Shown: positions 14,820 through 41,044 of the stretch, piece after piece
How the letters are laid out: each line of letters opens with the position of its first letter
Position numbering within the stretch: the first letter of the stretch is position 1
Origin: Lepidodermella squamata
Lineage: Eukaryota; Animalia; Gastrotricha
DNA length: 64,000 bases
Direction: 5' to 3'
Assembly (NCBI GenBank): GCA_047495785.1
Contig: JBLDXI010000009.1
Location: 2,356,001 to 2,420,000 of the forward strand
The notes under the pieces: generated by a model
The model's database searches: none
What the model was told of the DNA's origin: nothing
Seen by the model: the letters and a program-made list of their open reading frames with translations, nothing else
Made by a program: the position numbers and the translations under genes

Positions 14820-15331
14820 ATCAAACTTTAGGGAATAAAAATTTAGATTGTTTGTAAAGCAACCCTGCTTTATTTCACACTTGTCGCTTTTTTATTGGCG
14901 TCAGATTCACCGGATATTACAACTTCGAGTTGTTTCAAGAGTTAACCACCGCGCCCCAGCTATCAAATACTTTTTGCTATTTCTGAATTAAATTTGATTC
15001 GTGCGAAAAGGACACAATCTCTCAACGTGCCGTCAAAGTCTCCACACGAGCAAAAGATGAATCATTATGTGTCAAGTTGTGTAGATCCCAAATCCTAATG
15101 CAACTTGCTGTGAAAATAACACCTTTTTGTCAGATAATCGCATTGTCCTTGTGAATTAGGTGCTTTTCCATGGCTTTTATACATCTTTTCACTACACAGT
15201 TCATCATTTGTTTCTCATTATCCCGATTCATTTTTTATTTATTATAAAATAGAAACAAATTTCTTTTGGAAGGATGCACATATGATGTAAAAATCAAGGG
15301 ATAATTTTCCTAATTTTTCAAGGATGAAGTT

Positions 15332-19400: not shown

Positions 19401-20807
19401 TCAAAACTCGGCACTATCGGCTTCAACGTCCTCCGCCACTGATTTGTCATCGAGAACAATTTGAGGAACCTCTTGCTGCGTGTCATCCAATTGCTGATGC
19501 TCGTAGCCATCGACTTGCTCGTAACTTTCATCAGCACTGCGAGGCTTGCGGCGGGACTTGTATAGGGAATTCGATTTCCTATCAGACTGCTCTTGGAACT
19601 TGTCATCCTTGATTTCGTCTTTGGCATGAGCTGCAAAGAATAAGATAAACAATTACAACGTAAGCTTTATATTTCAAGACAAACCGTTGTATTTGGCGAC
19701 AAGCAAGCGTCCAGTTGACGAGACCTTACCGCCAAGTCCGTTCTCGACTGAGCAGGTGTAGTCACCCTCGTGTTCCCTAGAGACTTGAATCACTTGCAGC
19801 CATGAGGTGACTCGGTCAGGCCTAGAAGCTCCACGACTGGATACAGAAATACGGCCATCCCCATCTTGAATAACAAACTTAAAGCAAGTTGGAACAGTAC
19901 GAAAATTGTTTACCAGGCAAGCTTCGGGTTATTCCATCAACAGTTTGAAGATGCCATTCGATTTCTGGAAGGGGGAACCCGGAGACATCGCAAGTGAACA
20001 TTACATTAGTTCCGAACGCAGCACTAACATGGTTCTCAATTGGTTGCAAGATTTTGGGCGCTTGAAAAAAGTCGAATATGATAGATGGTAAGACTTATCA
20101 TTGTGAACCTACCACTATTGCAGGGTCCCGAGTGGACAATCTCAACTCGAGTCTTCCTTTCAGGGCTTTGCAGTTGGTCGTCAGCAACCCACGTGTTCGC
20201 CTCTTCGTTAATTGAGCACAACGTCGAGTAGGTTTGGTTGTCAGATCCGCAACGAGGCGCCTGGTCAGTGCAGACACACGTCGTCTCAACTTTCTTCGGC
20301 GCCTCCGGGTCAACCTCAGCATCTTCCCCCTCTTCGTCCAAATCAGTTCTTTCGGACAAAAAAACATAAAGTATCGTTTACATGGGCGTGCCACGGAGTA
20401 AATAGGTCATCTTGCCTGATTTGACACTCGAGATTCAATCCGCACGCTCCGTGGACGTAATTAGCCGCGTAATTAGTCGCCGCCTCGTAGTACGTATGGT
20501 GATCGTCGCCGCTTTTGAATAGAGGCGCGCCTATATCGCATCGGTCGCCCTCGCGACGCGCACAGATTCGGCAACACAAGCAGCGATCCCTTGTAATTTA
20601 TCTATAAATATTTATGGGACACGTTGTTGGGACACCTTACCATATAAGACCAGCTGGGCAATTATGTGGATCAACGCACTTAGTTCGGTCGCATCGATCG
20701 CTGCAAGCTGAAGTTCCAGTAATAGGCTGGGGATGTACTACCCCGGCATAGACCGAGGGACCTGTTAAGGTGATCACAGTAACGATTCCCAACGCAAGCG
20801 CTGCCAT
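19401..20807 (-). CDS. IGFBP-related protein (IGFBP N-domain + Kazal + Ig; IGFBP7/IGFBP-rP1/KAZALD1 type) with acidic C-terminal tail, ~6 coding exons
   Basis: Signal MAALALGIVTVITLTGPSVYA. IB domain CSDRCDRTKC...CPAGLIW|DRCLCCRICARREGDRC...CGLNLEC. Kazal CVCTDQAPRCGSDNQTYSTLC...SGPC. Ig APKI...FTCDVSGFPLPEIEW...HEGDYTCSVENGLG. Confidence 0.9.
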
Positions 20808-23800
20808 ACCAGCAGCCGCTAAACAATTTGTAACAAATGATTCTATAAGAAAATTATTTTGTAAAAAGTCCTCCTTAAGGAAGATTGGTTAGCTAATTGA
20901 ACGCAATGGAAAGATTTGTATCTGCTGCTGAAAATAAGAAAACAATCAGCAATCAGCAATCATCTTTCATTTGCTGAGTGCGATAATCTGCAATCATTGA
21001 GAAGGCGGTGCTGTGAGTGAAGAAAATCGAACATATTTTGATAATGAAGATCTGCTGTATAGGTATATATAGGTAATGATATCTCGGCTAAGCCGTCGTA
21101 AATCTGACTATGCGCGCGCGAGTGGGAGCGAGTGGCGCGTAGATGCGCGCAGAAAATAATGGAAGACGAACGGCTTATAACACGCACCGTTGTTATAGTT
21201 ATTGCAATAATAAACAAGCCATGCATTTTATAGGTCGAACCGTATATATACTGTTGTTTGTGTTATTATTATTATTATTATTACTGTTATTGCTATCATT
21301 GTTCTTCGGCCATCATCAGAGCCACTTGAAAGCGCCGCCCGCTCGTAAAAAAAGCGCGCGGCCAAGTGAGAAGAGCCGTGCTGGTTTTCTTAGCATCAGG
21401 CGTGTTTTTATAGTGCCGCGCTATTAGGCTGTATCTATGCGCATTATTGCGAGTTTGATACAGGTGCGCGCACAACACACGCTTGTTTATCGTAGTGGGC
21501 GAGGCGCGCATCGAGATTCGGATGAGCGCAACACGCTCGGACAATAGCTAGCCGTGTGTCACGAGGCGCGTGAAAAGCGCGATGCCGCCCGCCTTGGACA
21601 AACAACAGCGCCGGAGTGGCCGCGCGACGCCACGTCGAAATCATCTCAATCAAACTGCTGCGCCAGAGCAACATCACCATCTATCGTAGCCGTGCATTTA
21701 TTCGGCTCGAGCCCTTCCGGTGTATCCTGAGACGTGACTCGACAACACGCCTGCGTTCCGGTTACCTTTATCAAGCAGCCTTTTAATTGCGTTGCTAGCC
21801 ACTCTCGCACCTGCTGCTACGTCTTGTTGCCTCTTCGCCGGCTCTCGCGCTGTCTAGCGCCTCCTAATTTGGAGCTGAATTACCTATGATATTCCTCAAC
21901 GATTTATTGCTCTCTTCCTTATAAGAAAAAATTCCAAATTTAATTATGAGGATGAAAATTGAGAGGAATCGTTTGACCTCGCTGATACTTTCCCTCGGGA
22001 TTTTCAGCATTAAAAGGCCTTTGTCTAATCGGCGGTTCAGATTTTTAGCTAACTGTAAATTTCTTCAACTGAAGCCCAACTTAACGAGGTAACTTTGGGC
22101 AAAACCATACAATGTGTCCCATTAGTAACGCAAGTGAATAAAATACATGGAAAAGGGTTCAGAAACTCTAAAATGAGAGACATCTCATGGTCAGACAAAT
22201 TTTAGAAAAATTCAAAAACACGGGAACATTTATCAATTATCAAGTAATGGTAATGCGATTAAAAAAGTCCGGAGAAATTCGGCCCAACCAGGTAAAATAC
22301 CGAAAATTACCGAACCAGTTTTACCATCGGGGTTTTCCGGGCCTTCTCCGGTAAATTTTTTATTTCTTCGGTTAAATTACGGATAAAATATGGAATATTC
22401 TCTCGGTAGGTTTAATTTAATAAAATTAGTTGACGCTTCAGGGACACGCTGTATTTTTGCTCATAGAATTCTGAAATTTGCATGAAAGTTGGCCAAAGGG
22501 ATTCCTGACTTTGTAGTAAATTATGAGAATCTATTAGTTTTCCACCGATTTTTAGCGATATAAAACGTATTCGGCTAAGCTTGGATAATTGAGGGTAATT
22601 TTGGATTTTTTGGAAGCTCATTTGCATATGCAGTTTCTTGAGTATCACGATTCGCCATTGAAATTTGAGTCACATTTTGGAGATCAGTTCAGTTTGCAGC
22701 ATCACTGCAGGCCGGGTTTCGTAAGGTCAAAGTGCAACCCATGATTCAAGCTATTGAGCCCGTGCAGTTTGGAGTCGGAATTGTTTTTCATATTTTTCAG
22801 ATGATATTGAAACTTGATGATTAATTTCATTAATTTCCAAAAAATTAAGGCTACGCATGGAACGCCACAGAATGGTGCTATTTTTGAATTTCATGCGCTA
22901 TTTTTAGAGTTGTACTTTGACCCTGCAACTGACCTACTGCCATCAGCATCATTTTTCACCAAATCAAAGACAAATGGATTCAAACTCGTGGCATGTCAAG
23001 AAAAGTCCAAAATTATCCTATATTTAAACTCGAACTTATAAGGCGGATGGTGGATGACTTTCCAAAACCGATCGTCCGATTGTCGTTTTTATGCAACAAA
23101 AAATGCTTTTTTTAGCGTTCGGCATGGCGTAGCCAAAGAGTGTCCAGGGTTACAATATGTCCACGATTACTCCGCCAATCGGCTTGAAATTTCGACAACT
23201 TTAAGCCAATTTTATCAAACACGTGCTTTCTCTACGTCAAATTATCAAATTTCGCCGCTGTCACCTCTTCCCGCCTACAGACATGCTGATTATAGATTAA
23301 GACGCTGTTAATTACTCGCTTCAGCTTATAAGCTGCCCGTCTCTTTTCACGCAAAAATCCCACGTAACATCACCTGAGGCTCGAGGCATGCCTAAACTCG
23401 GTCTGGTCGAACGCCCACCGTACAAAAATTAGCCAGGTTTTTATTACCCTCACTATCGGACGAATCGATCGCGAAAAGGTTCAATGAGTACATATTATAA
23501 TTGTGAATATTTGATCATTTCTTTCTTATTTGTGCACCGACCATTCGCGAAGCTATGGTTCCATCAATGATTTACGCTGAAAACCCGCCTTAATAATTAA
23601 GAAATTCTCGGCATTGCGGTGTATGCTCGTGATTAATTAACCATAACCGTTAGAGGTGTTTAGGCTGCGACTAAAAATAAATCATGAAACCTGATAGAAA
23701 ATACGGTGACTGCTTTCAGCACATATTTTATCAAAATTCAATCTGCTTCCTGATGAGAAAAATAAACGCAATATCAAATAGTTTTTTCTTGGCACAAATG

Positions 23801-23862
23801 AGACATGGTATTATGGTATTATGGTATTATATTCGGTGACACTATATAAAATTACGCCGTTA

Positions 23863-24612
23863 TTACGGGCAATATTCTAACATTTCCTGGTGGTTGCATG
23901 AGTTGTAGCAGCATTCACAGACGACATTTTGAGGTGTCCAGAATGGTGATTTCGCGGACACGAACGCATCCAACCGGCCGCCTTGCCGTCGGAATTTGCT
24001 TTTGCCTGAATGCAGGACAGCTTTCGCTCGATTAGGAGACACAACGGCCCTAAGTAGCGCGTCTGAAAACGCGGTCGCACTGCCCTTGCGCTGAAGCGTA
24101 TACAACGGTCGTTGATCTGTCAAGTAGGTTTAATTCAATTAAAAAATTGATTAAAATTCAAGACAGGACGAGGTATAACGTACCAAAATGTCTACTCGGG
24201 TTGTATTTAGACAAATTTGAGCGAAACTTTTTCTGGCTCTTAGCCAACGGGACGATCACCTGCGACGAAGATTCAGGTACAGCGGCCTCGTCGCCCGAAA
24301 AGTATTGATCGAGAATAGCCGACTTCCATTGATCCGATACAGAATCACTCGGGCCGGTTCTTAAGCGGACTGAAGGCGACTTCGCTAAGCGGCAAACGTC
24401 GCGGATTTTACTGACAAGGCGATCTCCGCATATACCTGAAAATTGTCGAATAACAATTTTGAAATTTCAAAACGAAAAAAATCGTCACCTTTCCAAGACC
24501 TTCTTGGCGCTGGATTCATACATTTTCGATCTAACTTAGCGTTAATAGTAGCCAAATTTATCGCGAGTAAGGCAACGATCAGTAAAATCGCAGTTTGAAG
24601 TGATTTCGCCAT
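23863..24612 (-). CDS. Insulin-like peptide precursor 1 (8-Cys, MIP-type), 3 coding exons
   Basis: Signal MAKSLQTAILLIVALLAINLATINA; B chain KCMNPAPRRSWK|GICGDRLVSKIRDVC; introns 24436-24488 and 24117-24183; A chain FWTPQNVVCECCYNSCNHQEMLEYCP*. Confidence 0.9.
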
Positions 24613-27415
24613 TTGTTTAGAATCAGCAAAAAGTCGAATGTGTTGCTGTACTGCTAACATTTTGGCTGAGCATACTTTTCGATAATTCATAAAGTTCTTT
24701 ATCTCCTAATACAAAATGTTGACTTTAAAGAGTGTTCTATGAAGTGTCATGAGAAAAATCAACTATGAAACGGTGCGTTTAAAATTAACTGACTGGCGTT
24801 TGAAAAATTGAAAACGCGTGTAATTCGATATCAACTCGCGCTAAAACCAGCGATCGACCGCGCGCCAGCCAGGCTAATCAAAGTCCGAGCGCGCGCGGCT
24901 TGTAAGACGCGCGTTATCGAGCGGAAAAAACGCGCTTTTCCTCTGCATGGTTGTTTTGAGAATTTAATTAAACAGCGGAATAATGAGTTCACAATAGAAA
25001 ATACGGACAGAGTTTTATTAATGAAATGCGGGGAGGCCGTGGTTAGAGACGCTTCCGCAGACGGGATGTTCCCAAAATAAAGCTAAAATCGCGACAATAC
25101 TCAAGGTCAGTCGCTGAGTTGGAATAAATCAAGCGAATTTTATGTTGAGAGAGAACGCATTAAAGTTACTTTTTTTATTGTTCGAAACTAAAGGTGGGGG
25201 TAGAGGTGGAAGACATTTTCTAGGGGCCTCATTTTGCATGTAAAGGGGTGAGTTTTTGCGTCGCTGTGGGAATATTATCTTCGATAATTTGTTAAGTAAT
25301 TGTTAATTGCTTAGCCCAGGTTAGCGGCTGAGTAAATAAAACCCTAACACGTTTTAAAGACGCCGCGATTGAATGAATAATTTATTCACTCACTCATAAA
25401 AACTTATTAATGCGCAGCGTTTTAAAATGTTCTTGGATTATGGGCGATGGGCGTCAATTAAGTCGATGTAACCAACCCCCCATGTCGTGTCTTGGCTGCT
25501 GTCTGAGCTGGATGCTATAAATAATGTGCTGCCGATATGATCCCGGTCATTATTAGTTTCATGTCGGGTGTTTCGAGGTTGCATTCCACTTTTCTAAATT
25601 TCATTTAACAATGAATCAAGAGTTCAAATTATATTAAAACTGAAAGGTCACCTAATGGGTTTAATCGAGTAGACATTAATGGAATATGATGGAACGAGAG
25701 CCATTCATGGAAATAAATGAGGATGAAGGCTATATCTTTCTTATCGAGCCGCATGTTTTGCACTTTTATGAACAGTACTCGGTGTTTGCCAGAAATCCGG
25801 GGGTGCTAATTTTGACAGCGCGGAATATGAGCCGAAAGCGGGCATTTTTCGGTGAATTTTCTAGAGGCTAGCTAAACCCTTAATCCTTCAGATCCTAATG
25901 TCACCTTTCCTCTATCGGGAATAAAATTAGCTGTTCATGAAATTGTATACTACTGAATGGGTTCTTCGGGCATTTCTAACATCATTCTAGACCCATGGTG
26001 CCGATGATGATTCATTAAGGTGAAGGGACGATTTTTCTTTCCTTGAAATACGATTTTACCTTGAAAACATGCGTGGCTGGAAAAATTGGGTGATAATATG
26101 GGCCTAACCGAAATAAGTGATCATCGATAGTCTAGCAGCTGTCGGTTGATTAAATAGGTCAATCAACGGTTAATCAGGGTATTGAAGCTCTTAGGAAGGG
26201 CTGCGATACTAAATTCGACACACTTAAATCTATTAATTGTCGCCTTTCGTGGCTATTTGATTAATTTCGGGGTAAAAATAGCGAGACTAGCCTGAAAATC
26301 AGGGGGCATATAGATTCATGGACTGCGCAAGGTTTAAATTCAATCGCAGACGATAAGCCCCGTTCAGACTAAATTCCCTGGATCATTATAATCCGTCGTA
26401 GACAGTAGACGCTAGTTTAATTTATGGCTGTTATCATACAAAATTAATAATAGCTTAAAATTTCACTTGCCAATTAATTTAATTCTACGAATGTCTTAGT
26501 GGTTGAAGTTTTGTAAAGTTGGACATTAATTTATAATGGCAACGGAATCCGTAATCGACCCGGACTAATTTACACTAGTACCTAAACCCCAATGTAAGAT
26601 TTTGTAACGCGATGCGCTCAACTGTTAAAATCCGCCTAATTAAAAGCCAATTTAACCAGTTTTTAAAGTCCTATGAGGTTGTGCGTGAAGTGAACTCCCC
26701 AAACATAGGATTCCAGGCTCCAGAACTAAAGAGCCCTAGCACTAATTCAGATTTTTCAGGCTTTACGTTTTCCTTTGAATATCAATCGATCAGTTTACGA
26801 GATACGCTATAGCCTGCAGAGCCGATATCGATTTCAAGTATCGATTTTAAAAATCAGTGATTTTTCCAATATCAGTAATCTTGTAAAGCAACATTTGAAA
26901 TATTTCCACCTATGGCGGATGATGCCAAGTAAAATCTCAGGGTCATGAGGGGCATCATCTTCTAGCAGGGAAAAAAATCGCAAAGAATTGCAGTCCTGGA
27001 ATCTTAATAATAATAGTGGTGCATATATATTTAGATCCGTATTTCAACGCAAATTGCGCGTAAACATTTCTAAAATTTCCTACTGCGTTTTGCGGGGAGA
27101 AAATCCCTACTCAGTGAGTTCTAATTTTGGAAAAAATAATGTCCGATTCAGCTGATTCGTGTGGGAAAATCAAGTTATTATAACTCGCCATGTTCTCTTT
27201 ATTTTTTGTCGCATAAAAATGTTTGGAAAACAATAAAATGTAAAAACATGATAATATAATATCGACAATAGTTCATCTGTATAAAAATATATATAGGCGT
27301 GTTCGACTGAGTTCAAAAGAAAACGCCCGTATGGTTTGCCATAGATTAGCTTTGAAACTTCGACGCTGCTTGCCACCGGTTGGAAAAATCACCGCTATCA
27401 GTTCCGGCTTCATCA

Positions 27416-28025
27416 TCATTTTCGAGTGCAATAGCTGAGCATTTCTTGACGACTGCATGACGAATAGCAGCACTCGCATATGAGATTGTTAGGCGGCCAC
27501 GTCGCGGCGTCTTTCGACGCTTGCCGGCGAGTTCGAACAACACTCAGCGCCTGTTCTTTGCTAAGACTCGAAAGCGTGCGACCGAGCAACCGGTAGTCAG
27601 GTGTTGTTGTCGAGGCAGCTTCTGTTTCCTGTTTTTGTTCTATGGGCTTCGCATCAATTAAAGCTCTCGAAAGTTCAGATGAGTCTGTGCGTAAAAAAAA
27701 CACTAATTTATAATGCGAAAAAATAGATGACTAATAGGTTACGATTAAAATTCCACGGGCTCATGAAGTTGCTGCGTAAAAGTTGTATATTCGCCGCGCC
27801 AGCTAGCTTGATGTTGAATTTAAGGCCTCGGCTCCGGCAGACCATTTTGATGATCGACAATAGGCGATGGTCGCAGATGCCGTAGTATGGTGGAGGTTGT
27901 TGATGAGGGCAGTACTTGTCTTGGCCAGCTTCGGCGATGGAGAATTCGAGCGATATTGCGAACATTGCGGTTACGCATAGCTTCACCAAAGTCACGGCTT
28001 TACTTTCCAACTCAAATTTATTCAT
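27416..28025 (-). CDS. Insulin-like peptide precursor 2 (8-Cys), 2 coding exons
   Basis: B chain KYCPHQQPPPYYGICDHRLLSIIKMVC; intron 27685-27742; RTRR site; A chain TWPPNNLICECCYSSCSRQEMLSYC. Confidence 0.92.
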
Positions 28026-28387
28026 TGGAAATAAAACCTAAAAAGTAAGAAATTGAAACTTGAGGAATCGGTTATACTTATTTCTTATCAAAAGAAAACC
28101 CGATTCTCGGAAATTGTACGAAATAACGTAAAAGAGCGCGTAGACACTGAAACCTGACGATGAGCGACAAATAATTTACTCGATGTTGAGAAGGTCCATA
28201 CTAAACGAGTAGGCTGGTTGTCACATCAATTAGCGACGAGTGGTTAATAAGACACGTACGAGATTCACAAACTGATCGAAAGTTATCGAAAGCGCAGGTG
28301 AGCGTGAGTGCGCGCGCACAGGTGCGTGCGCTCATTATAATATATGAATGAGGGGACAATTATAAGGAAGTCGTCGTCATAAGATGC

Positions 28388-28395
28388 TGACGTCA
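28388..28395. promoter_or_regulatory. Perfect palindromic CRE (TGACGTCA) upstream of ILP2
   Basis: TGACGTCA lies ~360 bp 5' of the ILP2 ATG and ~45 bp 5' of a TATA-like TATATTATAA (minus strand, ~28335-28344). Motif match only. Confidence 0.3.
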
Positions 28396-28709
28396 TCAAC
28401 TCCTTAGGGGTCCAACATAACGTCACAATTTAAAACTAAAAAAATATTTAATATAACAGAAAACTAAACATCATTTAAGGACCTCAAGGTCGTAGTAAAA
28501 ACATCCGTCTTGGTGAAATGAGCGAGCAAAAAAATTTAGAATTAATTTGATTGATAAACCCTCGAAAAATGGTTCGGCAAATACATTTCATGTTATTTTG
28601 CTAGTAACAAATCGCGTGGGCAAATTAAAGACTGGACACTGAGTTGTTTATATGATGTATGTGTGTGTGATGAATCATCCCATAATATTTGCGTGATGGA
28701 TAGTTTCAC

Positions 28710-29270
28710 TCATGCGCAATGCTCAATTAGCTCGTTGATGGTACAGGCCGAATAGCAACACTCGCAGATGATGTTTTGCGGCCGCCACCACGCGCCGGCC
28801 GAACGTGTTGTCAGCATTCGCCGTGCTTCGGAGGCGTTTATTATCGCGGCTTCGCCGAAAATCGATTTGAAATACATCTGACGGTGCGTGACGTAATCGC
28901 CGGCTTCGGGGGACGAGCCTGGGAATAAAATCCGGGATTTATTTTGCGTGTTCCGCAATTTAGGTAGTATTTTATCCTCACCAGTGCGTAAAAGCGGCAA
29001 ACTGCTGACGCCGGCTTTGCTATTTTTCGCCCTCCGGCCTTTACCGCCCCTTCTCTGATGAGCTGTTTTAACTGGTTTCGAGTGGGTTGCGCAAGCTTTA
29101 CGAAGAGCATCCAGCAAATTCATGCCACAAATGCCGAAATAAGGCGGAGGTTGCATGTTGGGGCAGTATTTTTCGAAAGCGGCTGCTTTTCTCGGCTGAA
29201 TGCTGAGAACATAAACGGCAAACAACACCGGTGCTGAAGTTGCCGCGAAGCCCGTTGATATTTGACTCAT
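28710..29270 (-). CDS. Insulin-like peptide precursor 3 (8-Cys); probable in-frame 63-nt intron at 28919-28981
   Basis: B chain KYCPNMQPPPYFGICGMNLLDALRKAC; A chain WWRPQNIICECCYSACTINELIEHC. Confidence 0.92.
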   Translation of the reverse strand: MSQISTGFAATSAPVLFAVYVLSIQPRKAAAFEKYCPNMQPPPYFGICGMNLLDALRKACATHSKPVKTAHQRRGGKGRRAKNSKAGVSSLPLLRTGEDKILPKLRNTQNKSRILFPGSSPEAGDYVTHRQMYFKSIFGEAAIINASEARRMLTTRSAGAWWRPQNIICECCYSACTINELIEHCA

Positions 29271-30631: not shown

Positions 30632-31271
30632 TCACGGTTTTGTCCAACAATACTCCAATGCTTCTTGAACTTTGCAAGCGTGATAACAGCATTCACAGAT
30701 GATATTTTTCGGCGTCCAGCTTGGCAGCATTCTCCGCGATCGAATGAAAGATCGGGCGCTTCGCTTTTCCAACAACCGCCCCTTCCCAAGGGCGCTTATA
30801 ACCAAGCTATTAACGTCTTCTTCATCTAAGATAAAATAATTTAAAATTTTATGAAAAATTAATTTTGAATCTTTTACCTTCATAGCTGCTTTCGCGACTC
30901 TCCGAGTCAGGAATTTTGGAAATAGCTGCAGCTACACTTGGGTCAGATATAAGGGTATTGTTAGTGATAGACGTAGTTTTGAGGAGCGAAAGAGCAGTCC
31001 GCATTATGGAAGGAATGTTTTCGACGCTGAAAGTTGTAGACGAAGCTGTTTCGGCGATTTTGCCACTCGAGTGAAGCCGGCACAACTTTTTGATATACTT
31101 CATCATATCACGGCCGCAGACGCCCGGGAACGGGCCCGTTTGCTGATGCGGACAGTACTGCGTGTACCCGGCGGCATCGCTCGCCGGTACCAGCGTGGCG
31201 ATGAGCAGGTACCACGCGCCGCAGATGACTAGCAGCTCTCGTAGGGTGATTATGTCAATAAAATTAGCCAT
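30632..31271 (-). CDS. Insulin-like peptide precursor 4 (8-Cys), 2 coding exons
   Basis: B chain QYCPHQQTGPFPGVCGRDMMKYIKKLC; intron 30826-30877; KR and RSRR sites; A chain SWTPKNIICECCYHACKVQEALEYC. Confidence 0.92.
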
Positions 31272-33102: not shown

Positions 33103-33585
33103 TCAGCACCACGAAACCATCTCCTGAACGCTGCAGTAGTTGAAGCAGCACTCGCAGACCAAATTTTGCGGGCTCCACTTTTGAAACAGGTTGGTTACAT
33201 GCCGGCGAGAGCGAACCAGCGTACGCGCCGCTTTTGCATCATTTATCCGCGCAAGTACGAGGTTGGCGAACGCGTCGCTCATCGTGCGAAGCATCGGCAA
33301 TTTGCCATTGGCGCCGCCAAGCGCTCGGTTCATCCCACCGCCGCCGCTCATCGGTGCGACTTGGGCGAGAAGGCGGTCGTGGTGGCGGGGCGCGACGCCG
33401 CCGTTACGGGTCCGGCACACCTCGCCGAGTTTGCCTAACAGTTGCATACCGCAAACGCCGGGGAATGAGTGCAGGCCCTCGAGGCGCGGGTTAAGGCACG
33501 TTTTCGTCAAAACGGCGTCGGCGCTGCGTGACCAAAGCGACACCAGCAGAATGGTGACTGCAATCGTAGCTTGCAACAGATACAT
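33103..33585 (-). CDS. Insulin-like peptide precursor 5 (8-Cys), intronless CDS
   Basis: Signal peptide; B chain KTCLNPRLEGLHSFPGVCGMQLLGKLGEVC; RSRR site; A chain KWSPQNLVCECCFNYCSVQEMVSWC*. Confidence 0.93.
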   Translation of the reverse strand: MYLLQATIAVTILLVSLWSRSADAVLTKTCLNPRLEGLHSFPGVCGMQLLGKLGEVCRTRNGGVAPRHHDRLLAQVAPMSGGGGMNRALGGANGKLPMLRTMSDAFANLVLARINDAKAARTLVRSRRHVTNLFQKWSPQNLVCECCFNYCSVQEMVSWC

Positions 33586-35141
33586 TGATAGCAAGGTATT
33601 GTGATGGTAAAAAAAATTGTGATGAAATAATCACAATATTAACAACAAGTTGCAGACCATTTACGCCCTAGGAAACATAGAAAATAAAATATAAAAATTT
33701 GTCCGCACAAACAAAAACAAAGCCAGGTATATAATTTGCACTTCTTTCGAACTCGTAATCTAATAAAATATTTGTGGTATTTCCCAATATGAATATCTCC
33801 TAGTGGGCGAGGTAGCCGGAGGAAATTTTGTTATACAACATATGTCAAATTTTCAAGTAGTACATACGTTTTCTAGGTCCCCTTATATATTTCTAGTATA
33901 TTGGCGCCGGGGAGGAATAAATTTGCCGGGAAGGAAGCCAAGCGTGTGCCGATTGATATAGGAAATAAAAGAGGGCCAACTGTTTCCGTTATGGCTCAGG
34001 GGGCGTGTGATTTTGAGACGCAAATCGGCTTTCATAGAAAAATCACTCGAGCAATTTTTACGATTTACCAGATCATCCCAGCTTATTGTAGGGGTCAACA
34101 AGGTAGGGCACGAAAACACACGTGTTTTTTCAGTCCGAAGTCTAAGCCTTGCTCAGAATTATAGGGATAGTCTCGCAATAGAAAAAAAGTGCTTCGTTAA
34201 TGTTGAATAAAACCCAACATCGCACTAGCTACTATTTAGGATCAGGTGAGCTGGGTAATAGGAAAAAATTGAATTTGGTCGGGTTTTTAAACGCCGGTGA
34301 TGAAGCTTTGGCCTCCGTGTCCGTAAAAGGAGGTCTCTTCTAATTGGGCTTGTCAACTATTTAATTGAGATGTATAATGTTTGTTCAACGAAAATCACTG
34401 CGAAAATATCCGCGTTTCACCTGAACGAGACGCCTAGGATGTCTTTAATCCGCGACACTGTAGTCGGGGCTATTGCACAAATTCCTATCTGGGGGTGGCT
34501 TTCAATTGTACACATTCCTTTAATTAGCGGTAGAAAATAACTTGACGTAGGTCGATGAGGTGAAAATTCCGGCGCTATCACGTTTTTTTGTGTACGCCAT
34601 TAGGATGTTCAACTGAGGAATGCAAGGGCGGATGCGCTACTTTGCTGATCAAGACAATTATCGAGTCTTGTCAAGATTCATGATATAATGTCGCTGAATT
34701 TTTTTTAGCTTAGGAAAAAAACGATGGTCACCTCATTTTCTCTGTCGTCAGTCTTTATTTAGGCAAACATTTACTCCAGTTGTCGAGACGGAAAAAAAAT
34801 AGGAACGTGGACATTTTTTCGGCCGGGTTCATTCACAAAAATTATTATTCAACATAAATATTTACCGAGTATATAGAAACACCGCGGGGGCATCTAATAC
34901 GCAGTTTCATTCATCTTTTTGTCAACCAGACAGGAAGTCATTGGCTAGAGCTCAAGATTCGTTCAGCGACAAATATTTATCATATTAAAAAACGTCACGA
35001 AAAAAACAGGAAAAACTAAAACAGGAATAATATGATTCGGTCTAATTAAGACAAAACGCGAATTTCGAGGAGTAAACATATTTTCGACACAACCATGATG
35101 TCCTCGAATTTCACGAGTATTTATATGGACATAATTTTCTT

Positions 35142-35633
35142 TTACAGATATTTGCAATATTCCGTGATTTCTTCTACCGTACAGACGTTGTAGCAACATT
35201 CGCAGATGATATTCTGCGGCGTCCAGCCAGCTGTTGGCATAGAAATCGACCTTTTCGATCGCAGAACAGCCAGGGCGTCATGCCGGGATTTAGCCGGCAA
35301 TGCATCTCTTCGTTTTCGCAACACACTCAGGATCAGTTGATCGGCTACATCCTCATCCTCATCGTCGTGGAAGTTTCGCTTGTTGACGTAACCGAAACGA
35401 GGCTCGATGAAGTTCCCCGGCCCTGCGTTGTAGCCGTTACTCCGGCAAACGCTGTTAAGCTTTGCGAGCAGTCTCATGTCGCATATACCGGCGCCGTATC
35501 TCTGAGGGTGTTTACAGACCCTAGTCAGACCAGCTTCTGTGCTAGATGACATGGCTAATATGGTGACAAGCAAGACAGCTGCGACGAAATCGACACCGCG
35601 ACGTGACTTGAGCGTCTCAAATTTTCCCATCAT
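35142..35633 (-). CDS. Insulin-like peptide precursor 6 (8-Cys), intronless CDS, two C-peptides
   Basis: B chain RVCKHPQRYGAGICDMRLLAKLNSVC; KR, RKRR and RSKR sites; A chain GWTPQNIICECCYNVCTVEEITEYC. Confidence 0.94.
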   Translation of the reverse strand: MMGKFETLKSRRGVDFVAAVLLVTILAMSSSTEAGLTRVCKHPQRYGAGICDMRLLAKLNSVCRSNGYNAGPGNFIEPRFGYVNKRNFHDDEDEDVADQLILSVLRKRRDALPAKSRHDALAVLRSKRSISMPTAGWTPQNIICECCYNVCTVEEITEYCKYL

Positions 35634-37196
35634 TATCAGCAAAATATGAAGAAAAGCTACAAAAAAATGATGCAAAAAGCGTGAATGAGAGGGTACTAAG
35701 CGCGAAGACGTTGGTGTAGTTTGACAGTGTTCGTTAATGATAGGCGTGGGCAATATGAATATGGGGGTGTGGCGACTACAGCCACACAGATTCTATCGGT
35801 CACATATCGCTAAGCGGAAAAAAACAAGCTCTCCTGGCACAAAAAATGATGTGATGAGTGCCTAGAAAATAACATAATGTGAATGGTACTCGAATTTCTG
35901 GCACTGATTCAAATCTCTTGCTGAAAAGCGATATAGGAAAAACGACGCTATGGATTTTTTGCATATTATAAACAGGAATTTCGGGGTGTTGAGTTTGGCC
36001 AGCAATCTAGAGCCACGTTCGTTATATTGGATGTTCACTGAGGCGGAAACGGGGTTACACGAGTTCCCATGAGCCTTGATTTTCCAAGTCAGTTCATTTG
36101 AATTTAAAGTTGGTGCTGGTGAAAAAATAATCAAGTTTTTTTCGAAAATCAAGGTTGTAATAATTAAAATCAGATAGTAAATCTTTATCAATTAAAAACG
36201 CACTGACTGATTGAAGTTTTAATTACTTTCTGTCTGTTCTATATTTCTCAAGTGTTGTCGCGAGGCCTGGCGAATTATATAGTCCCGATATGGACACTGA
36301 TGTCAGGGTCTAATAATTCGATTCGATTATTTGCATCACGCGCTACTTAACGCAGTGAACCCGTTAACGGACTTCGTCACATCATATATTGCGTATCATA
36401 TATGTTTACGACGGATTTCCGATGATTCAAAACAACGTTGGCTTAGACATCCGTGAAAAACAGCTTCTTATGTTATAATAAGCGAAAACAATAAAATTGG
36501 CTGCAATCACCGGAGGTAGTGCCACTTGAGTGACGACACGCGTTATAGCTGATTGATGATAGCTGATAATTAGCGCCGCATAGGAAAGCGTTAGGAATTT
36601 TAACCATGTGATCGGATAGCACCGAAGGAATTTACAAATTATTAAATAATAAATTCTCGATTTTTCAGGAAGGTCTCGCGCGTAATTTCGGTGCGTCATT
36701 GAACAAGGTCTAGTGCGTCATCGGCATCTGCAATAGCCCACTTATGCTGTTTTATTTATATTTTTCTCATGATATACACGTAATTTGAAAAATAAATCAC
36801 AAACATTTTGCCGCGTCAACGAAAACGAGCAACGAAAAAAATATAATAATATCGATCGATAAATTTTTCAAGTTTTGAAAAATCCTTGATTTTTTTTTAG
36901 AGATCCTCTATAGTGGATTCAATCGCTACAGCTTGTCTTTCAAGACATGTTTCGTATAAAAGGAAGAATAAGATGCGATGAATGGCAATCGAATTACCCG
37001 ACCTATGGTCCCTATAGTCGGAACAACATTCTCAAATGTGTAACTAAAACTAGCCACGATTTTTCTATCGTATTAGAGATAGATTGAAACAGAAATTTTT
37101 AAAACATGCATTTCAAAAAATCAGCATGAAAATTTAGTGATAGGTATATCATAATATGTTTCAAACATTATCTCTGTTCATATTATGTTATTCAAC

Positions 37197-37866
37197 TTAA
37201 TTCAACTGAGGGCAATATTCTGTCATCTCTTGAACGGTGCAAATGTTGTAGCAACACTCGCAGACAATATTTTGAGGCGTCCAGTTTTTAGGGTTCAACA
37301 AATTGGCCCACATCGAGTTGGCACCCCCGGATCGAACGAAAGCCAGAGCAAGTTCCTTCCGCAGTATTAGTTCTCTGAGGCGAGGCGGTATTTCCACCGA
37401 AGGCAGCACTGGAATAGTTAAAAAATGTTAAAAGAAATAGGTCAAAAAAATTCGACTCACGATCTGAAGCAGCGATCACATTGTCTTCTCCACTCATCTC
37501 CGAGGACGCATCAGTCCCATTTTTTTCGAACGACAAGTCCGCCGAGCGACGTATGCGCTGGTTGCTGCTGGTTACTTTCGCTTGTTTCTGCAGCTTTTGG
37601 ATAACATATAAATTAGCGCGATCAATCGCCAACTGGCTCGGGTTCGATGGTGAGTTGGCGTATTTTACCAAGCCGTCGCGGTAGAGGGGGCAAACTTGGA
37701 AATGAACGACGTACATGAGTCGCTCGTTGCATATGCCTCGCTCGTGGCCGAAGCGTTGCGGCTGAGGGCAGATTTTCGTGTACAGGGCCGAGCATGAGTC
37801 GATGAGGCAACACGCAGCAAAAACTGCCACCGTCAAGCAAACTTCGCATTTTTTCAACCGCACCAT
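37197..37866 (-). CDS. Insulin-like peptide precursor 7 (8-Cys), 2 coding exons
   Basis: B chain KICPQPQRFGHERGICNERLMYVVHFQVC; RIRR site; intron 37409-37460; A chain NWTPQNIVCECCYNICTVQEMTEYC. Confidence 0.92.
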
Positions 37867-40543
37867 TTTTTTTGTTTGAAACTCAGTCACTCAATTATCG
37901 ACAATCTAAATCAGAAAATAAAACATAAACTATTTATACACTGCAAACTCAATGCCAGGACCATTTGGACATTTAGAAGACATTCCTTACTCAGCCCGGA
38001 CCAATTCGGAATAAGACTAATTAATTTAATCAAAATTGAAAAGCCAAACAAATTTCACTCGGGTCTAGCATAATATATTGACCGACTCGAGCGATAAATT
38101 ATGACAGAAGACTCTGACATAGGAAGTGGGCGATTGACATAAATTGAAGCGATGACGATGTGTATTCCCTTAGAGCGGAAGAGGCAAGTTTTTTGTTTTC
38201 GCCGATTGTGTTACAGTTTTGTTTTATGGTACAAGAAATATGAGCTACTTTTTAAGCCAAGACATGATAATAAAATTGCGCGAGATTTGTGGAAGAAAAT
38301 TCAAGTAACCAACAAGGCATTTTCGCGACAAAGGCTAATTCCGAGGCCTTCAGGAAGCGGAAATTAGGAAAAAGTACAATAAGGGAAATCGGAACACTAT
38401 AGTTAACTAGGTGTAAAGCGTAGGCTGGAAATTTGTCGAAAATCAGCGTAATAGCACCTTCGAAAAACCGCAAATCAAACTACGCTTTTAATTATCGAAA
38501 TCGAAGAGGAACATGGACTATAAAGTTCGATGGGTTTACGCTGTCATGGTTGAAAAAAATCATAGCTTCAAATTACACATCACGTAAAATACGTATTCGA
38601 AAGAAACCACGCCTACGCTTCAAGGGCATAAGAAAACGCAAATCGGCAATCAGTAGGAGTAGTCTTGAGGTTATCTATTAGGTTATTTTCGCACGCCATA
38701 GGGCGAATGAAGATGCTGTTCGAACTAATAGCGATGGACGATAGACGATAGATGGAAGTTAAAAATATATTCTTTTTCCTAGAATTTTGAGTCCGACGGC
38801 TATCTTAATATAATTGGAGAGTCTGACTCATTCTGTTTGTTCTAAGACCGTTAGAGTTCATCTTTTTATGAAGGAAAAATTAGCAGGCTAGAACCTAGAC
38901 GTTTATCCTTTCAGACTCTTCCTTAGACAAGGTGAATGACTATACATCATGATTTTTTCAGAGATGGATGCAAGATCATAAATCAAAGAAATTGAAAGAT
39001 TCGCATGTTCAAATCGTGATCAAATGTGAGAAATTGCCAGTAATGCAGGTGGGGAATTAGGATAAGATGGAATAAAGTGCGGGGTGAAATTATTACAATT
39101 CTATAATTGATGTAGGGTGTTAATCCGTAGCCTGCGTAGATCTTGTCGAAATTGTACAGAAAAATTCCCTCTAATTACTAGAATTCCTACTTTACATTTG
39201 CGTCGATTTCGCTCCTAGATCGAGCGAGATAACAGCAAGGGGCGATTTTCGCATTTTATACTGTCGAAAATTGAATTTTCATTAGCGGCGGATATAAGCA
39301 AATTTTCAGCTGATTCATCAACCAGACACTGTTGTGCAGACCTCGACCGGCGGCTTCCTGTTCAAACCTGGCTGCGAACTTCGGATGCACGTGTGAAAGC
39401 TGATATTGTAAAATTTTCCAATGGCGCAGTATTATCATCTCCCGATGTTCAATTATGGAGTATAATAAATTGAAAAATTGTGAGAAAGCAAGTCGCTACT
39501 GATGAGAAGGAAATCCCTTTGTGACATAGGAGTGACATTTTCTCGAAGCTGAAAACATCCTATCCATTACGTCTCGTTTTTCATGGCAGCAAAATTTTGG
39601 CAACAACCTACTGAGCACGACTTCGAGAAATTTTAGCTTCAAGTGAGAACTGTTGACGCAAACGTAGCATATATAGGCATTGCGGAATTCTTTACTGGGT
39701 TAAAAACCAAAAGTAAGCCACCACATTTACAAATCACAGCGGTTATTTGATCGCCTTTCGAATTATGACCTATTACGCCTCTCATCCAGACGCTAATTGA
39801 TGGTCAAAGTTGACTTTATTGCTTTATATCTCGCTGGCAGTTTATATTGTTCGATAATCGTTTTGTCGACCACGCCGATTTTTAGCCCACACTCATATGG
39901 GACACGAAAATCGATCGCTCTCCACCGCGGCGAGACGCTTTTCATTAACCATAATATTAAGACTTGTCGCGCAATTTGTCGCGATTTTTCTGGCACGATT
40001 ATTGGAGATTAAACCTGCTTATCCAGAGGCTTATATTCCGACAAAAACCCGCAATGACGTCAATAAAATGACCTTCGAAAATGACCTGATGCCAATACAA
40101 GTTCGATTAATTTTTTTTATTTCATTTTAAATTTCAGTTTCGTGAAATCATCATTCAACCAAGTCAAATTCGAGAACGAAATAAATAATAATAAACAGAG
40201 AGATGCGAGAGATTATATCGTAAATAATTTAAAAAATGAGTGGCGAGACATGCAATCTAAAACATCGATTTTTTTCAGACAGCCACACTTGTTTACAATG
40301 GTCACAGTCTACCGTATTAGGAACACGCGCTGATTTTTGCCGAAAAAATTGTTCGAGAGGGTTAAAAATCTTAACCGAAATGATTTTTCGTTGAAGAACG
40401 AACGATGAGACCAGCTCATCGAGAATACCTTTTGTTCGAATTGAAAAATTTCTAGCGGTCCAAATGTTGCGTCGAAATGTGTTGATCTCGGTAGATATGG
40501 AAAGAAAGTTGAAAAAATGAGGCTATTCAATTTTTTTTAATAA

Positions 40544-41044
40544 CTAGCAATACTCCAATAATTCTTGTACAGAACACTGATTATAACAACATTCACAGAC
40601 AACACTTTGCGCCTGCCATTCGACAGATCGCTTCAGCCGCCGTAGATTGCCGCGGCTTTTCACGAATGACCTCGCTGTTTCCATGTTATAAACCGCGTCT
40701 CGTAAAACTTTCGGAAACATCGTCACGAGGCTGGGTTGAATTTCGATCGACTGCCGATTGGCACTATTTTCTGCCATGATCTCTCGGCTGATTGATGATT
40801 GCTGCGGTTCGATGTCATTATTTTGTGTCATTTTAGTGCGGAACAGGCCTGAGCGGTGAAAATTGCTGCTTTTGCCTCGAAGTCGGCATAAATCTTTGAT
40901 GAAACGCGGCAGGCGTTCTCCACAAATTCCGTTGCGATGGAAGAAATTCTGCGGGGTCGGGCAGGTTTTCGAATAGCCGGCCTCGCTCATTGAGGCGAAC
41001 GCGACCAGAAGTGAAGCGATCGCGCCAAGTTGAAACACCTTCAT
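40544..41044 (-). CDS. Insulin-like peptide precursor 8 (8-Cys), intronless CDS
   Basis: Signal MKVFQLGAIASLLVAFASMSEA; B chain KTCPTPQNFFHRNGICGERLPRFIKDLC; RRLKR site; A chain SVEWQAQSVVCECCYNQCSVQELLEYC*. Confidence 0.94.
   Translation of the reverse strand: MKVFQLGAIASLLVAFASMSEAGYSKTCPTPQNFFHRNGICGERLPRFIKDLCRLRGKSSNFHRSGLFRTKMTQNNDIEPQQSSISREIMAENSANRQSIEIQPSLVTMFPKVLRDAVYNMETARSFVKSRGNLRRLKRSVEWQAQSVVCECCYNQCSVQELLEYC

What the first reader, a model, noticed from the sequence alone, without database searches (positions are those of the whole stretch)
19401..41044. Eight-gene insulin-like peptide array physically linked to an IGFBP7-type binding-protein gene
Seen: eight divergent ILP precursor genes (23863-41044) on the minus strand, followed ~3 kb downstream in the same orientation by an IGFBP-Kazal-Ig gene, with no other recognisable gene in between. 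Known: IGFBP7/IGFBP-rP1 proteins bind insulin-family peptides and modulate their availability. Inference: this could be a co-regulated ligand-plus-carrier/antagonist locus, in which one binding protein buffers a diversified hormone family. I do not know of this linkage being described, but cannot check that.
Basis: partly seen in the sequence, partly recalled or inferred. Interest (0 to 1): 0.85.

Follow-up and report, generated by a model that had tools for sequence, protein, structure and literature searches.

The report
Insulin-like gene array beside binding-protein gene
A small invertebrate (probably a gastrotrich) has eight insulin-like hormone genes in a row, followed by a gene for a secreted protein of the kind that binds such hormones in crustaceans; a distant relative keeps the same hormone-then-binder order, but nothing yet shows that the two work or are switched on together.

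Summary
Eight minus-strand insulin-like peptide (ILP) genes lie at 23863-41044, all of the 8-cysteine type. Four have no intron, three have one predicted C-peptide intron, and one has two. A six-exon, 377-aa gene (19401-20807) lies 3.06 kb downstream on the same strand and encodes signal peptide, IGFBP-type N-domain, Kazal domain, Ig domain and a charged tail. Nothing recognisable lies between them.

RNA contigs show the binding-protein gene transcribed and spliced at four introns as predicted. One intron is GC-AG, and the mRNA carries a non-genomic 5' leader.

A metagenome contig from a deeply diverged relative (synonymous sites saturated, 69% protein identity) carries the orthologue with one ILP gene 1.6 kb upstream on the same strand. 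Both outer flanks differ from the window. The pairing is therefore old. At least one ILP lineage (ILP4) also predates the split.

Not shown: co-regulation, binding, or linkage outside this lineage. It is absent in Nasonia and at five other metagenomic ILP loci. A recent paper assigns non-chordate "IGFBP7" genes to the Kazald family.

The scan noted other ILP clusters in this genome (s1-384572, s1-395097, s1-407601). None was followed up, and none mentions such a neighbour.

The parts
40544..41044 (-). ILP1: intronless prepro-insulin-like peptide of 166 aa, the member furthest from the binding-protein gene.
   Evidence: The ORF is. Pfam Insulin scores 26.6 bits against a cut-off of 23. A KR site precedes the A chain.
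37197..37866 (-). ILP2: two exons (37461-37866 and 37197-37408) with a predicted 52-nt intron at 37409-37460 (GTGAGT..CAG) in the C-peptide. The B chain is atypical: Asn replaces the usual Gly, and 12 rather than 11 residues separate the two core cysteines.
   Evidence: The A-chain exon scores 23.3 bits for Pfam Insulin. The intron is predicted only; there is no RNA evidence.
35142..35633 (-). ILP3: intronless, 163 aa counted from the first ATG. An RSKR site precedes the A chain.
   Evidence: Pfam Insulin scores 17.7 bits, below the cut-off.
33103..33585 (-). ILP4: intronless, 160 aa. Its orthologue in the relative is P0001.
   Evidence: Pfam Insulin scores 26.0 bits. ILP4 pairs with P0001 in both the A-region tree (support 85/94) and the B-region tree (92/96). 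30 of 49 core positions are identical.
30632..31271 (-). ILP5: two exons (30878-31271 and 30632-30825) with a predicted 52-nt intron at 30826-30877 (GTAAAA..TTAG).
   Evidence: There is no Pfam Insulin hit on either exon alone, but the cysteine framework is complete.
28710..29270 (-). ILP6: intronless, 186 aa.
   Evidence: Pfam Insulin scores 24.1 bits.
27416..28025 (-). ILP7: two exons (27743-28025 and 27416-27684) with a predicted 58-nt intron at 27685-27742.
   Evidence: The A-chain exon scores 14.9 bits for Pfam Insulin, below the cut-off.
23863..24612 (-). ILP8: three exons. Exon 1 is 24489-24612. Intron 1 (24436-24488) splits the B chain. Exon 2 starts at 24435. The boundary between exons 2 and 3 is unresolved. 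The A-chain exon ends at 23863.
   Evidence: Small RNA contigs of run X2 lie on 24245-24372 and 23842-24083.
20845..23862 (.). Spacer with no recognisable gene. It holds an (AAT)n microsatellite near 21250-21300 and a high-copy repeat at about 22000-22600.
   Evidence: No Pfam hit for the eight longest ORFs in the spacer (58-94 aa). No Rfam family. Word depth in X1 reaches about 35,000 against about 150 elsewhere, and the only RNA contigs lie on the repeat.
19401..20844 (-). IB-Kazal-Ig (invertebrate Kazald / IGFBP-rP1-type) gene with a 377-aa coding sequence in six exons. Exon 1 (20641-20807) encodes the signal peptide and first half of the N-domain. Exon 2 (20416-20589) encodes the rest of the N-domain, including CLCCRIC. 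Exon 3 (20113-20348) encodes an acidic linker and the Kazal domain. Exons 4 (19914-20060) and 5 (19685-19864) encode the Ig domain. Exon 6 (19401-19630) encodes a basic-then-acidic tail and the stop codon. The trans-splice-like acceptor AG is at 20844-20843.
   Evidence: Sequence and Pfam results. RNA joints match introns 20590-20640, 20349-20415 (GC-AG), 20061-20112 and 19865-19913, and a 20-nt non-genomic 5' leader is present. Intron 5 (19631-19684) is predicted only. The orthologue P0026/L009 is 149/215 aa identical over the compared segments. The orthologue's best solved-structure match is human IGFBP7, E 3.7e-14.

Best explanation
The locus is a tandem array of eight old, diverged paralogous genes for secreted 8-cysteine insulin-like peptides. 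Each precursor has a signal peptide, a B chain, a C-peptide flanked by basic cleavage sites, and an A chain with a WxPQNxxCECC N-terminus. A single gene follows on the same strand for a secreted protein made of an IGFBP-type N-domain, a Kazal domain, an Ig domain and a charged tail. This is the invertebrate Kazald / IGFBP-rP1 family.

Shown here: all nine genes are intact. The binding-protein gene is transcribed and spliced, and its mRNA carries a 5' leader not encoded in the window. An ILP-then-binder gene pair in the same order exists in a relative so diverged that synonymous sites are saturated. The ILP family had already diversified before that split.

Inferred: the IB-Kazal-Ig protein binds some or all of these ILPs outside the cell and acts as carrier, buffer or antagonist, as the decapod proteins of the same architecture do with their androgenic-gland ILP. 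The long-kept adjacency may then reflect shared chromatin or enhancer control rather than co-transcription. The genes are 0.7-3 kb apart, and the binder has its own leader-acceptor site.

My estimates for the separate parts are: genes as described 0.95; linkage ancestral to the two species 0.8; the protein binds at least one of these ILPs 0.5; linkage maintained by selection for co-regulation 0.25.
For: Eight A-chain and B-chain frameworks were found, with Pfam Insulin support. The gene model of the IB-Kazal-Ig gene is confirmed by spliced RNA contigs at four of its five introns. Its orthologue P0026 was found by exhaustive HMMER search. That orthologue sits on the 14.4-kb contig L009, with an intronless ILP at 3203-3517 upstream of the gene at 5081-6188 on the same strand. 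tblastx finds nothing else shared between L009 and the 64-kb window. dN is 0.19-0.32 with dS saturated or not computable, and 149/215 aa are identical. ILP4 pairs with the relative's P0001 in two independent region trees. For the orthologue, the best solved-structure relative is human IGFBP7 and the nearest ESM Atlas clusters are IGFBP7, Kazald and IGFBP-rP1. In the literature, crayfish Cq-IGFBP (IB-Kazal-Ig) pulls down the ILP IAG, and the lobster orthologue is modelled binding three ILPs (PMC5618481). In a prawn, knock-down of either IAG or its binding protein lowers the other (PMC7352508).
Against: There is no expression evidence for ILP1-7 and no co-expression data. The single read-laying run covered only 19200-25199. 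No shared upstream 8-mer was found beyond T-rich sequence. Only one relative could be examined. In it a single ILP adjoins the gene, and its ILP4 orthologue sits at another locus. That neighbouring ILP has no in-frame ATG in the contig, and its closest window paralogue is unresolved by the trees. Other agents' notes say gene order is often conserved between this genome and a distant relative, which lowers the weight of one conserved junction (untested here). Human IGFBP7 binds insulin and IGF only weakly and acts as a heparin-dependent adhesion molecule (PMC13510594). The N-domain could only be tested exon by exon, and Pfam IGFBP is weak (E 0.044). The linkage is absent in Nasonia.
Confidence: 0.5

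Rival explanations
1. The linkage is neutral. The ILP array and the Kazald-type gene are neighbours by historical accident, kept only because no rearrangement has yet hit that junction. The IB-Kazal-Ig protein works independently of ILPs, for example in matrix, adhesion or development, as proposed for vertebrate IGFBP7 and Kazald.
For: Human IGFBP7 has low affinity for insulin and IGF and acts as a soluble adhesion molecule (PMC13510594). Kazald genes have developmental and regeneration roles (PMC12955574). No shared promoter motif was found. Only one of three junctions is conserved in a single comparison, and microsynteny with a distant relative is reported as common in this genome (untested). 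The Nasonia orthologue has gustatory-receptor and prominin neighbours.
Against: The junction survived while both outer flanks changed and synonymous sites saturated. Decapod proteins of this architecture do bind ILPs (PMC5618481). My own rough estimate is that, in a genome of some 10^4 genes with a handful of ILP loci, the chance that this particular gene lands next to one is of the order of 10^-3.
Confidence: 0.4
2. The genes form an operon. ILP8, or the whole array, is transcribed with the binding-protein gene as one precursor that is resolved by spliced-leader trans-splicing, giving obligatory co-expression.
For: The binder's mRNA contig starts with 20 nt that are not in the window, joined at a lone acceptor 35 nt before the ATG. 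Most ILP genes also have a pyrimidine tract plus AG just before the ATG. Other agents report a spliced leader and operon-like clusters in this genome.
Against: The spacers are 0.7-3.06 kb here and 1.56 kb in the relative, against about 100 nt in the operon-like clusters noted elsewhere in this genome. The ILP8-binder spacer holds a transposon-like high-copy repeat. No RNA contig bridges the spacer. Spliced leaders are also added to monocistronic mRNAs (established knowledge).
Confidence: 0.07
3. Part of the array is decaying. Some members (ILP2 first, possibly ILP5 or ILP8) are unexpressed or non-functional, so the effective hormone set is smaller than eight.
For: ILP2 has a 12-residue inter-cysteine B helix, Asn in place of the near-invariant Gly, and extra cysteines in its signal region. 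ILP3 and ILP7 have Asp at that Gly position. ILP5 gives no Pfam Insulin hit. Only ILP8 was checked against RNA.
Against: All eight keep open frames, signal peptides, all eight framework cysteines and basic processing sites despite 22-31% overall identity. This is the signature of long purifying selection on the framework.
Confidence: 0.2

Closest known systems
Decapod IGFBP-rP1-type ILP-binding proteins (Cq-IGFBP, Sv-IGFBP, Mr-IAGBP)
   Same: They share the secreted IB N-domain, Kazal and Ig architecture. They are the invertebrate members for which ILP binding (pull-down of IAG) and mutual regulation with an ILP are reported (PMC5618481, PMC7352508).
   Different: No genomic linkage to ILP genes is reported in the papers I could search. 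The gastrotrich protein has a 32-residue insert in the N-domain between the ninth and tenth cysteines, conserved in the relative (APLF..HHTY..Y.HG.CG..LEC). It also has an acidic linker and a 76-aa basic-then-acidic tail ending in EF.
Vertebrate IGFBP7 and Kazald1-4
   Same: For the relative's orthologue, human IGFBP7 is the best solved-structure match, aligned from the N-domain end through Kazal and Ig, and these families are the nearest ESM Atlas clusters. Both have 11 cysteines in the N-domain, including CxCCxxC.
   Different: IGFBP7 has a basic heparin-binding loop after the N-domain where this protein is acidic. According to PMC12955574, non-chordate genes of this kind descend from the single ancestral Kazald gene, not from IGFBP7. 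Human IGFBP7 is on 4q12, far from INS/IGF2 on 11p15 (my own knowledge).
Tandem ILP gene clusters (Drosophila dilp1-5, Bombyx bombyxins, C. elegans ins clusters, molluscan MIP genes)
   Same: All are tandem arrays of diverged ILP paralogues. The extra cysteine pair (a B-chain N-terminal Cys plus CxCC in the A chain) is the molluscan MIP-type 8-cysteine framework (my own knowledge; the pattern was tested).
   Different: In those species the known ILP binders (Imp-L2, SDR, ALS in flies) are not adjacent to the ILP cluster (my own knowledge). Here a candidate binder closes the array.
Insect Imp-L2 / IBP
   Different: Imp-L2 consists of two Ig domains with no IB or Kazal domain, and its binding mode is unrelated to that of IGFBPs (PMC6155051 abstract; PMC11925022). 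The present protein has one Ig domain plus IB and Kazal domains.

Membership tests
Insulin/IGF/relaxin superfamily (PF00049) | A chain with CC-x3-C-x8-C | tested here: met
   All eight genes have it, in the extended form C-x-CC-x3-C-x8-C.
Insulin/IGF/relaxin superfamily (PF00049) | B chain with two core cysteines 11 residues apart after G-x-C | tested here: met
   Seven genes match by pattern. ILP8 matches across a 53-nt intron. ILP2 has 12 residues, and ILP2, ILP3 and ILP7 lack the Gly that usually follows the first core cysteine.
Insulin/IGF/relaxin superfamily (PF00049) | Profile score above Pfam's curated cut-off | tested here: inconclusive
   Above the cut-off for ILP1, ILP4, ILP6 and the ILP2 A-chain exon. 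Below it for ILP3, ILP7 and ILP8. No hit for ILP5. The split genes could only be tested exon by exon.
Insulin/IGF/relaxin superfamily (PF00049) | Signal peptide and basic processing sites around a C-peptide | tested here: met
   Hydrophobic N-termini and KR, RSKR, RSRR or RTRR sites before the A chain are visible in the alignments. No signal-peptide predictor was run.
8-cysteine (molluscan MIP-like) ILPs | An extra cysteine pair: one near the B-chain N-terminus and one two residues before the A-chain CC | tested here: met
   Present in all eight genes and in both ILPs of the relative.
Invertebrate Kazald / IGFBP-rP1 (IB-Kazal-Ig) | N-terminal IGFBP-type cysteine-rich domain with CxCCxxC | tested here: inconclusive
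   Pfam IGFBP gives only E 0.044 on exon 2 alone, because the domain is split by intron 1. The 11-cysteine pattern is visible. The relative's DRCLCCRVCARREGDRC aligns with IGFBP7 residues 55-72. The joined model was not searched.
Invertebrate Kazald / IGFBP-rP1 (IB-Kazal-Ig) | Central Kazal domain | tested here: met
   Kazal_1 scores E 2e-6, 28.1 bits against a cut-off of 21. PDB matches include HTRA1 and IGFBP7.
Invertebrate Kazald / IGFBP-rP1 (IB-Kazal-Ig) | C-terminal Ig (I-set/C2) domain | tested here: met
   I-set scores 24.6 bits on exon 4 alone. The orthologue P0026 scores I-set E 4e-12.
Invertebrate Kazald / IGFBP-rP1 (IB-Kazal-Ig) | Binds insulin-family peptides | not testable with these tools
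   No multimer modelling or assay was available. The precedent exists only in decapods (PMC5618481).
Classical IGFBP1-6 | C-terminal thyroglobulin type-1 domain | tested here: not met
   No such Pfam hit on any exon. The C-terminal half is an Ig domain plus a charged tail.
Imp-L2-type insect ILP-binding proteins | Two Ig domains with no IB or Kazal domain | tested here: not met
   The protein has one Ig domain preceded by IB and Kazal domains.
Spliced-leader-resolved operon | Same-strand genes separated by about 100 nt, with the downstream gene receiving a leader | tested here: not met
   A leader-like 20-nt 5' end is seen on the binder's mRNA. However, the spacer is 3.06 kb (1.56 kb in the relative), and no RNA contig bridges it.

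The most novel reading that the evidence does not exclude
The ILP-then-Kazald/IGFBP-rP1 gene pair is an ancient, selectively maintained ligand-plus-binder unit. The ancestral bilaterian IB-Kazal-Ig protein was an ILP partner, and in this lineage its gene has stayed beside its ligands and shares their regulatory domain. This would give the first genomic argument that ILP binding is the original role of a family whose IGF/insulin binding is disputed in vertebrates.
Probability: 0.2. Interest if true: 0.7.

Novelty: new member of a known kind. Interest (0 to 1): 0.45.

Why it matters
Whether IGFBP7/Kazald-type proteins are true regulators of insulin-family hormones is unsettled. Vertebrate IGFBP7 binds them weakly and has other roles, and only decapod data support real ILP binding. 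A ligand-binder gene pair kept together across a deep divergence, in a tiny animal that can be cultured, gives a concrete case to test: one binder, eight candidate ligands, all sequences in hand. The locus also documents a large, old ILP repertoire and a Kazald-family gene in Gastrotricha, a phylum for which I found no account of insulin signalling in the papers searched. If binding and co-expression fail, the locus is simply one more tandem ILP cluster with an incidental neighbour.

Tried and rejected
Steps that led nowhere:
- A word-indexed protein search with ILP1 found nothing.
- A profile of all eight ILPs found only P0001.
- A search with P0026 found only itself, so no wider set of orthologues could be collected for a synteny survey.
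- A metagenome scan with the Kazal exon found no relative.
- A metagenome scan with the ILP profile gave five loci (L001-L005). Three or four show a single ILP A chain (L004 and L005 are identical over the ILP); L002 matched only weakly and shows no A-chain pattern. L004/L005 have a B-chain exon more than 1 kb upstream. They probably come from other animals, and no IB-Kazal-Ig gene lies in the DNA held for these loci (1-19 kb; up to 10 kb either side of the ILP in L004).
- The Nasonia IGFBP-rP1 neighbourhood has no ILP gene.
- An upstream 8-mer comparison of the eight ILP genes, the binder and the relative's genes found only T-rich words.
- Trees of the A-chain and B-chain regions, kept separate, did not resolve which window ILP matches the relative's binder-adjacent ILP. 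Identity (30/49) and the signal junction SEAGYSK[TS]CP favour ILP1.
- Rfam found nothing in 18-43 kb.
- Literature searches for any described ILP-IGFBP/Kazald linkage found none.

Readings rejected:
- Classical IGFBP: there is no thyroglobulin type-1 domain.
- Imp-L2 type: the domain set is wrong.
- Operon: the spacers are too long.

Handling of spliced models: a local script translated across candidate GT-AG pairs to place introns. One search printed far too much, and one search is the usable version. Spliced genes were searched exon by exon by reference.

Full report
OBSERVATION

A six-frame pattern scan finds the insulin A-chain framework, in the extended form C-x-CC-x3-C-x8-C, exactly eight times on the minus strand between 23869 and 40597. 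The only other hit in the 64-kb window is a spurious one in a wrong frame of a mucin-like gene. Seven B chains of the form C-x(9-13)-G-[IV]-C-x(11-12)-C lie upstream of seven of these A chains. The eighth gene, ILP8, has its B chain interrupted by a 53-nt intron (24436-24488) and reads CMNPAPRRSWK|GICGDRLVSKIRDVC once that intron is removed.

Four genes are single ORFs: ILP1 40544-41044, ILP3 35142-35633, ILP4 33103-33585 and ILP6 28710-29270. Three need one short intron of 52-58 nt in the C-peptide: ILP2 37197-37866, ILP5 30632-31271 and ILP7 27416-28025. ILP8 (23863-24612) needs two introns.

Pfam Insulin is above its curated cut-off for ILP1, ILP4, ILP6 and the ILP2 A-chain exon. It is below the cut-off for ILP3, ILP7 and ILP8, and absent for ILP5, which could only be tested as two separate exons. 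Whole-precursor identity among the intronless members is 22-31%. All eight keep a hydrophobic N-terminus, eight framework cysteines, a conserved A[RL]xxVRSRR-like processing region and a WxPQNxxCECC A-chain start. Gene-to-gene spacers are 0.7-2.8 kb.

THE DOWNSTREAM GENE

From the sequence I predicted six exons separated by introns of 49-67 nt, giving a 1131-nt coding sequence of 377 aa.
- Exon 1 (20641-20807): signal peptide and the first four cysteines of an IGFBP-type N-domain.
- Exon 2 (20416-20589): the rest of that domain, with CLCCRIC.
- Exon 3 (20113-20348): an acidic linker and a Kazal domain.
- Exons 4 and 5 (19914-20060, 19685-19864): one Ig I-set domain.
- Exon 6 (19401-19630): a 76-aa tail with a basic patch (KSRRKPR) and an acidic end (..EADSAEF).

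Pfam supports Kazal_1 (E 2e-6) and I-set (E 2.7e-5). The split N-domain gives only E 0.044.

One public run (coded X2, 2015) holds a spliced 809-nt contig. Its four joints fall exactly on my predicted introns 1-4, including a GC-AG intron at 20349-20415. A second contig lies on the 3' exon. The gene is therefore transcribed and processed as modelled. Intron 5 remains a prediction.

The contig begins with 20 nt that are not in the window. They are joined at a lone acceptor (AG at 20844-20843), 35 nt before the ATG. This fits the spliced leader that other agents report for this genome. I did not verify that the sequence is the same.

Small X2 contigs also lie on ILP8 exons (24245-24372 and 23842-24083). 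The 3.06-kb spacer has no Pfam-recognisable ORF, no Rfam family and no RNA contig other than on a high-copy repeat at 22.0-22.6 kb.

WHAT FAMILY IS THE BINDER GENE?

An exhaustive HMMER search with the Kazal exon mostly returned multi-Kazal proteins. [quoted passage not shown]

P0026 is a clear orthologue. It matches the window gene from the end of the N-domain through Kazal, Ig and the tail, down to the terminal EF.

The contiguous second exon of that orthologue (286 aa, L009:5328-6185) has human IGFBP7 as its best solved-structure relative. The match (E 3.7e-14) is aligned from the N-domain through Kazal and Ig. The nearest named ESM Atlas clusters for P0026 are IGFBP7, Kazald1/3 and IGFBP-rP1.

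A 2026 phylogenetic study argues that non-chordate "IGFBP-rP1/IGFBP7" genes descend from a single bilaterian Kazald gene and that IGFBP7 proper is a chordate development (PMC12955574). The accurate label is therefore invertebrate Kazald / IGFBP-rP1-type. The gene is not a classical IGFBP, because it has no thyroglobulin type-1 domain. It is not Imp-L2-like, because it has one Ig domain preceded by IB and Kazal domains.

Two features are conserved between the two species but absent from IGFBP7. The first is a 32-residue aromatic-rich insert between the ninth and tenth N-domain cysteines. The second is an acidic linker where IGFBP7 has its basic heparin loop.

IS THE LINKAGE CONSERVED?

P0026 is encoded on three ENA metagenome contigs, and the longest (L009, 14.4 kb) has enough flank to test this. 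In L009 the orthologue spans 5081-6188. It keeps intron 1 at the same position and phase and lacks introns 2-5.

An intronless 104-codon ILP lies at 3203-3517 on the same strand, 1.56 kb upstream. This is the same order and orientation as ILP8 followed by the binder in the window.

tblastx finds no other similarity between L009 and the whole window. The left neighbour in L009 is a Cys-loop receptor gene, and the right neighbours are cysteine-rich and serine-rich ORFs.

The two species are far apart. Over 215 gap-free codons, protein identity is 69% and dN is 0.19-0.32. dS is about 2 or not computable. The pairing has thus outlasted saturation of silent sites and the turnover of both flanks.

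There are limits to this result.
- It is one comparison.
- Other agents' notes say that gene order is often shared with a distant relative in this genome (not tested here).
- The relative has only one ILP next to the gene.
- That ILP has no in-frame ATG in the contig; the ATG at 3201 is 2 nt out of frame.
- Its closest window paralogue is unresolved. ILP1 is favoured by 30/49 identical core positions and by the junction SEAGYSK[TS]CP, but the trees leave it in a polytomy.

A second ILP of the relative, P0001, was found with the eight-gene profile. It pairs with ILP4 in both the A-region tree (support 85/94) and the B-region tree (92/96). It sits on another contig between Cys-loop receptor and RDD-domain genes, with no ILP or binder nearby. 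The ILP paralogues are therefore older than the species split, and the array has been either assembled or dispersed since.

Outside this lineage the linkage was not seen. The Nasonia gene has gustatory-receptor and prominin neighbours. At five other metagenomic ILP loci, no IB-Kazal-Ig gene lies in the DNA held (1-19 kb; up to 10 kb either side of the ILP in the longest, L004).

HOW IT PROBABLY WORKS

Shown: nine intact same-strand genes, expression and correct splicing of the binder, and an ancient ILP-binder adjacency.

Inferred from family knowledge: proteins of this architecture can bind ILPs. Crayfish Cq-IGFBP pulls down the androgenic-gland ILP. The lobster orthologue is modelled binding three ILPs through its N-domain. 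Prawn IAG and its binding protein affect each other's expression (PMC5618481, PMC7352508). Human IGFBP7, in contrast, binds insulin and IGFs only weakly and has IGF-independent adhesion functions (PMC13510594).

I therefore rate "binds at least one of the neighbouring ILPs" at about 0.5. I rate "linkage is maintained for co-regulation" at about 0.25.

Co-transcription as an operon is unlikely (about 0.07). The spacers are 0.7-3 kb, against about 100 nt in the operon-like clusters noted elsewhere in this genome. No RNA contig bridges the ILP8-binder spacer, and that spacer holds a repeat insertion. A crude upstream 8-mer comparison found no shared motif.

NOVELTY

ILP gene clusters and IB-Kazal-Ig proteins are both known kinds. 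Seven full-text searches found no description of an ILP cluster linked to such a gene, and none of insulin signalling in gastrotrichs. The locus is a new member of known kinds, with one new and testable feature, the conserved pairing. Earlier scan notes list other ILP clusters in this genome, one of them 67 kb beyond this window. None was followed up, and none mentions such a neighbour.

ORGANISM

Run and organism names were coded. Other agents' notes call the organism probably the gastrotrich Lepidodermella squamata. I did not test this. The tiny introns, the gene density and the leader-bearing mRNA seen here agree with their description of the genome.

LIMITS

Only one read-laying run was available, and it covered 19200-25199, so ILP1-7 have no RNA evidence. 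Spliced models were searched exon by exon. The joined 377-aa model and the joined ILP2, ILP5, ILP7 and ILP8 models were not searched or folded. No multimer modelling was possible.

Noticed in passing
window 20842-20844 (minus strand): The RNA contig of the IB-Kazal-Ig gene begins with 20 nt not encoded in the window (mRNA sense GCGAATTTGATTTGTGTCTA). They are joined at a lone acceptor ttcttatag, 35 nt before the ATG. This looks like spliced-leader trans-splicing. Most ILP genes show a similar pyrimidine tract plus AG just before their ATG.
   Followed up: partly
window 20349-20415: Intron 2 of the IB-Kazal-Ig gene is a GC-AG intron (cag|gcaaga ... gaaag). The spliced RNA contig confirms it.
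   Followed up: yes
window 22000-22600: A high-copy repeat lies in the ILP8-binder spacer. Word depth in the DNA run reaches about 35,000 against about 150 around it, with many variant joints. It is probably a MITE or transposon fragment. An (AAT)n microsatellite lies at about 21250-21300.
   Followed up: partly
L009 5081-6188 versus window 19401-20807: The relative's orthologue keeps only intron 1, at the same position and phase. The window gene has five introns. This points to intron gain in one lineage or loss in the other since the split.
   Followed up: partly
L009 3195-3210: The relative's binder-adjacent ILP has an otherwise intact 104-codon frame but no in-frame ATG. The sequence reads aATGTGaaaatt, with the ATG 2 nt out of frame. 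This could be an assembly error, a polymorphism or a disabled start. It remains unexplained.
   Followed up: no
L009 545-2423 and L006 1551-4065: In the relative, both ILP loci sit head-to-head with paralogous Cys-loop ligand-gated channel genes (36-44% aa identity). This suggests a duplicated receptor-plus-ILP unit. No such receptor gene is in the window.
   Followed up: partly
window 37690-37770, 35445-35516, 27837-27911: ILP2, ILP3 and ILP7 replace the near-universal glycine after the first core B-chain cysteine with Asn or Asp. ILP2 also has a one-residue longer inter-cysteine helix. This is a possible sign of functional divergence within the array.
   Followed up: no
window 50500-63400 (+ strand): A tandem array of at least nine DGAT2/MGAT-family acyltransferase genes (Pfam DAGAT, E down to 6e-79), most with short introns.
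   Followed up: partly
window 300-16300 (- strand): A tandem family of secreted proteins with a Laminin_G_3 (concanavalin-like) domain. Several are followed by Thr/Ser-rich mucin-like repeats. An SLC6 transporter gene on the plus strand (9.8-12.7 kb) interrupts the family.
   Followed up: partly
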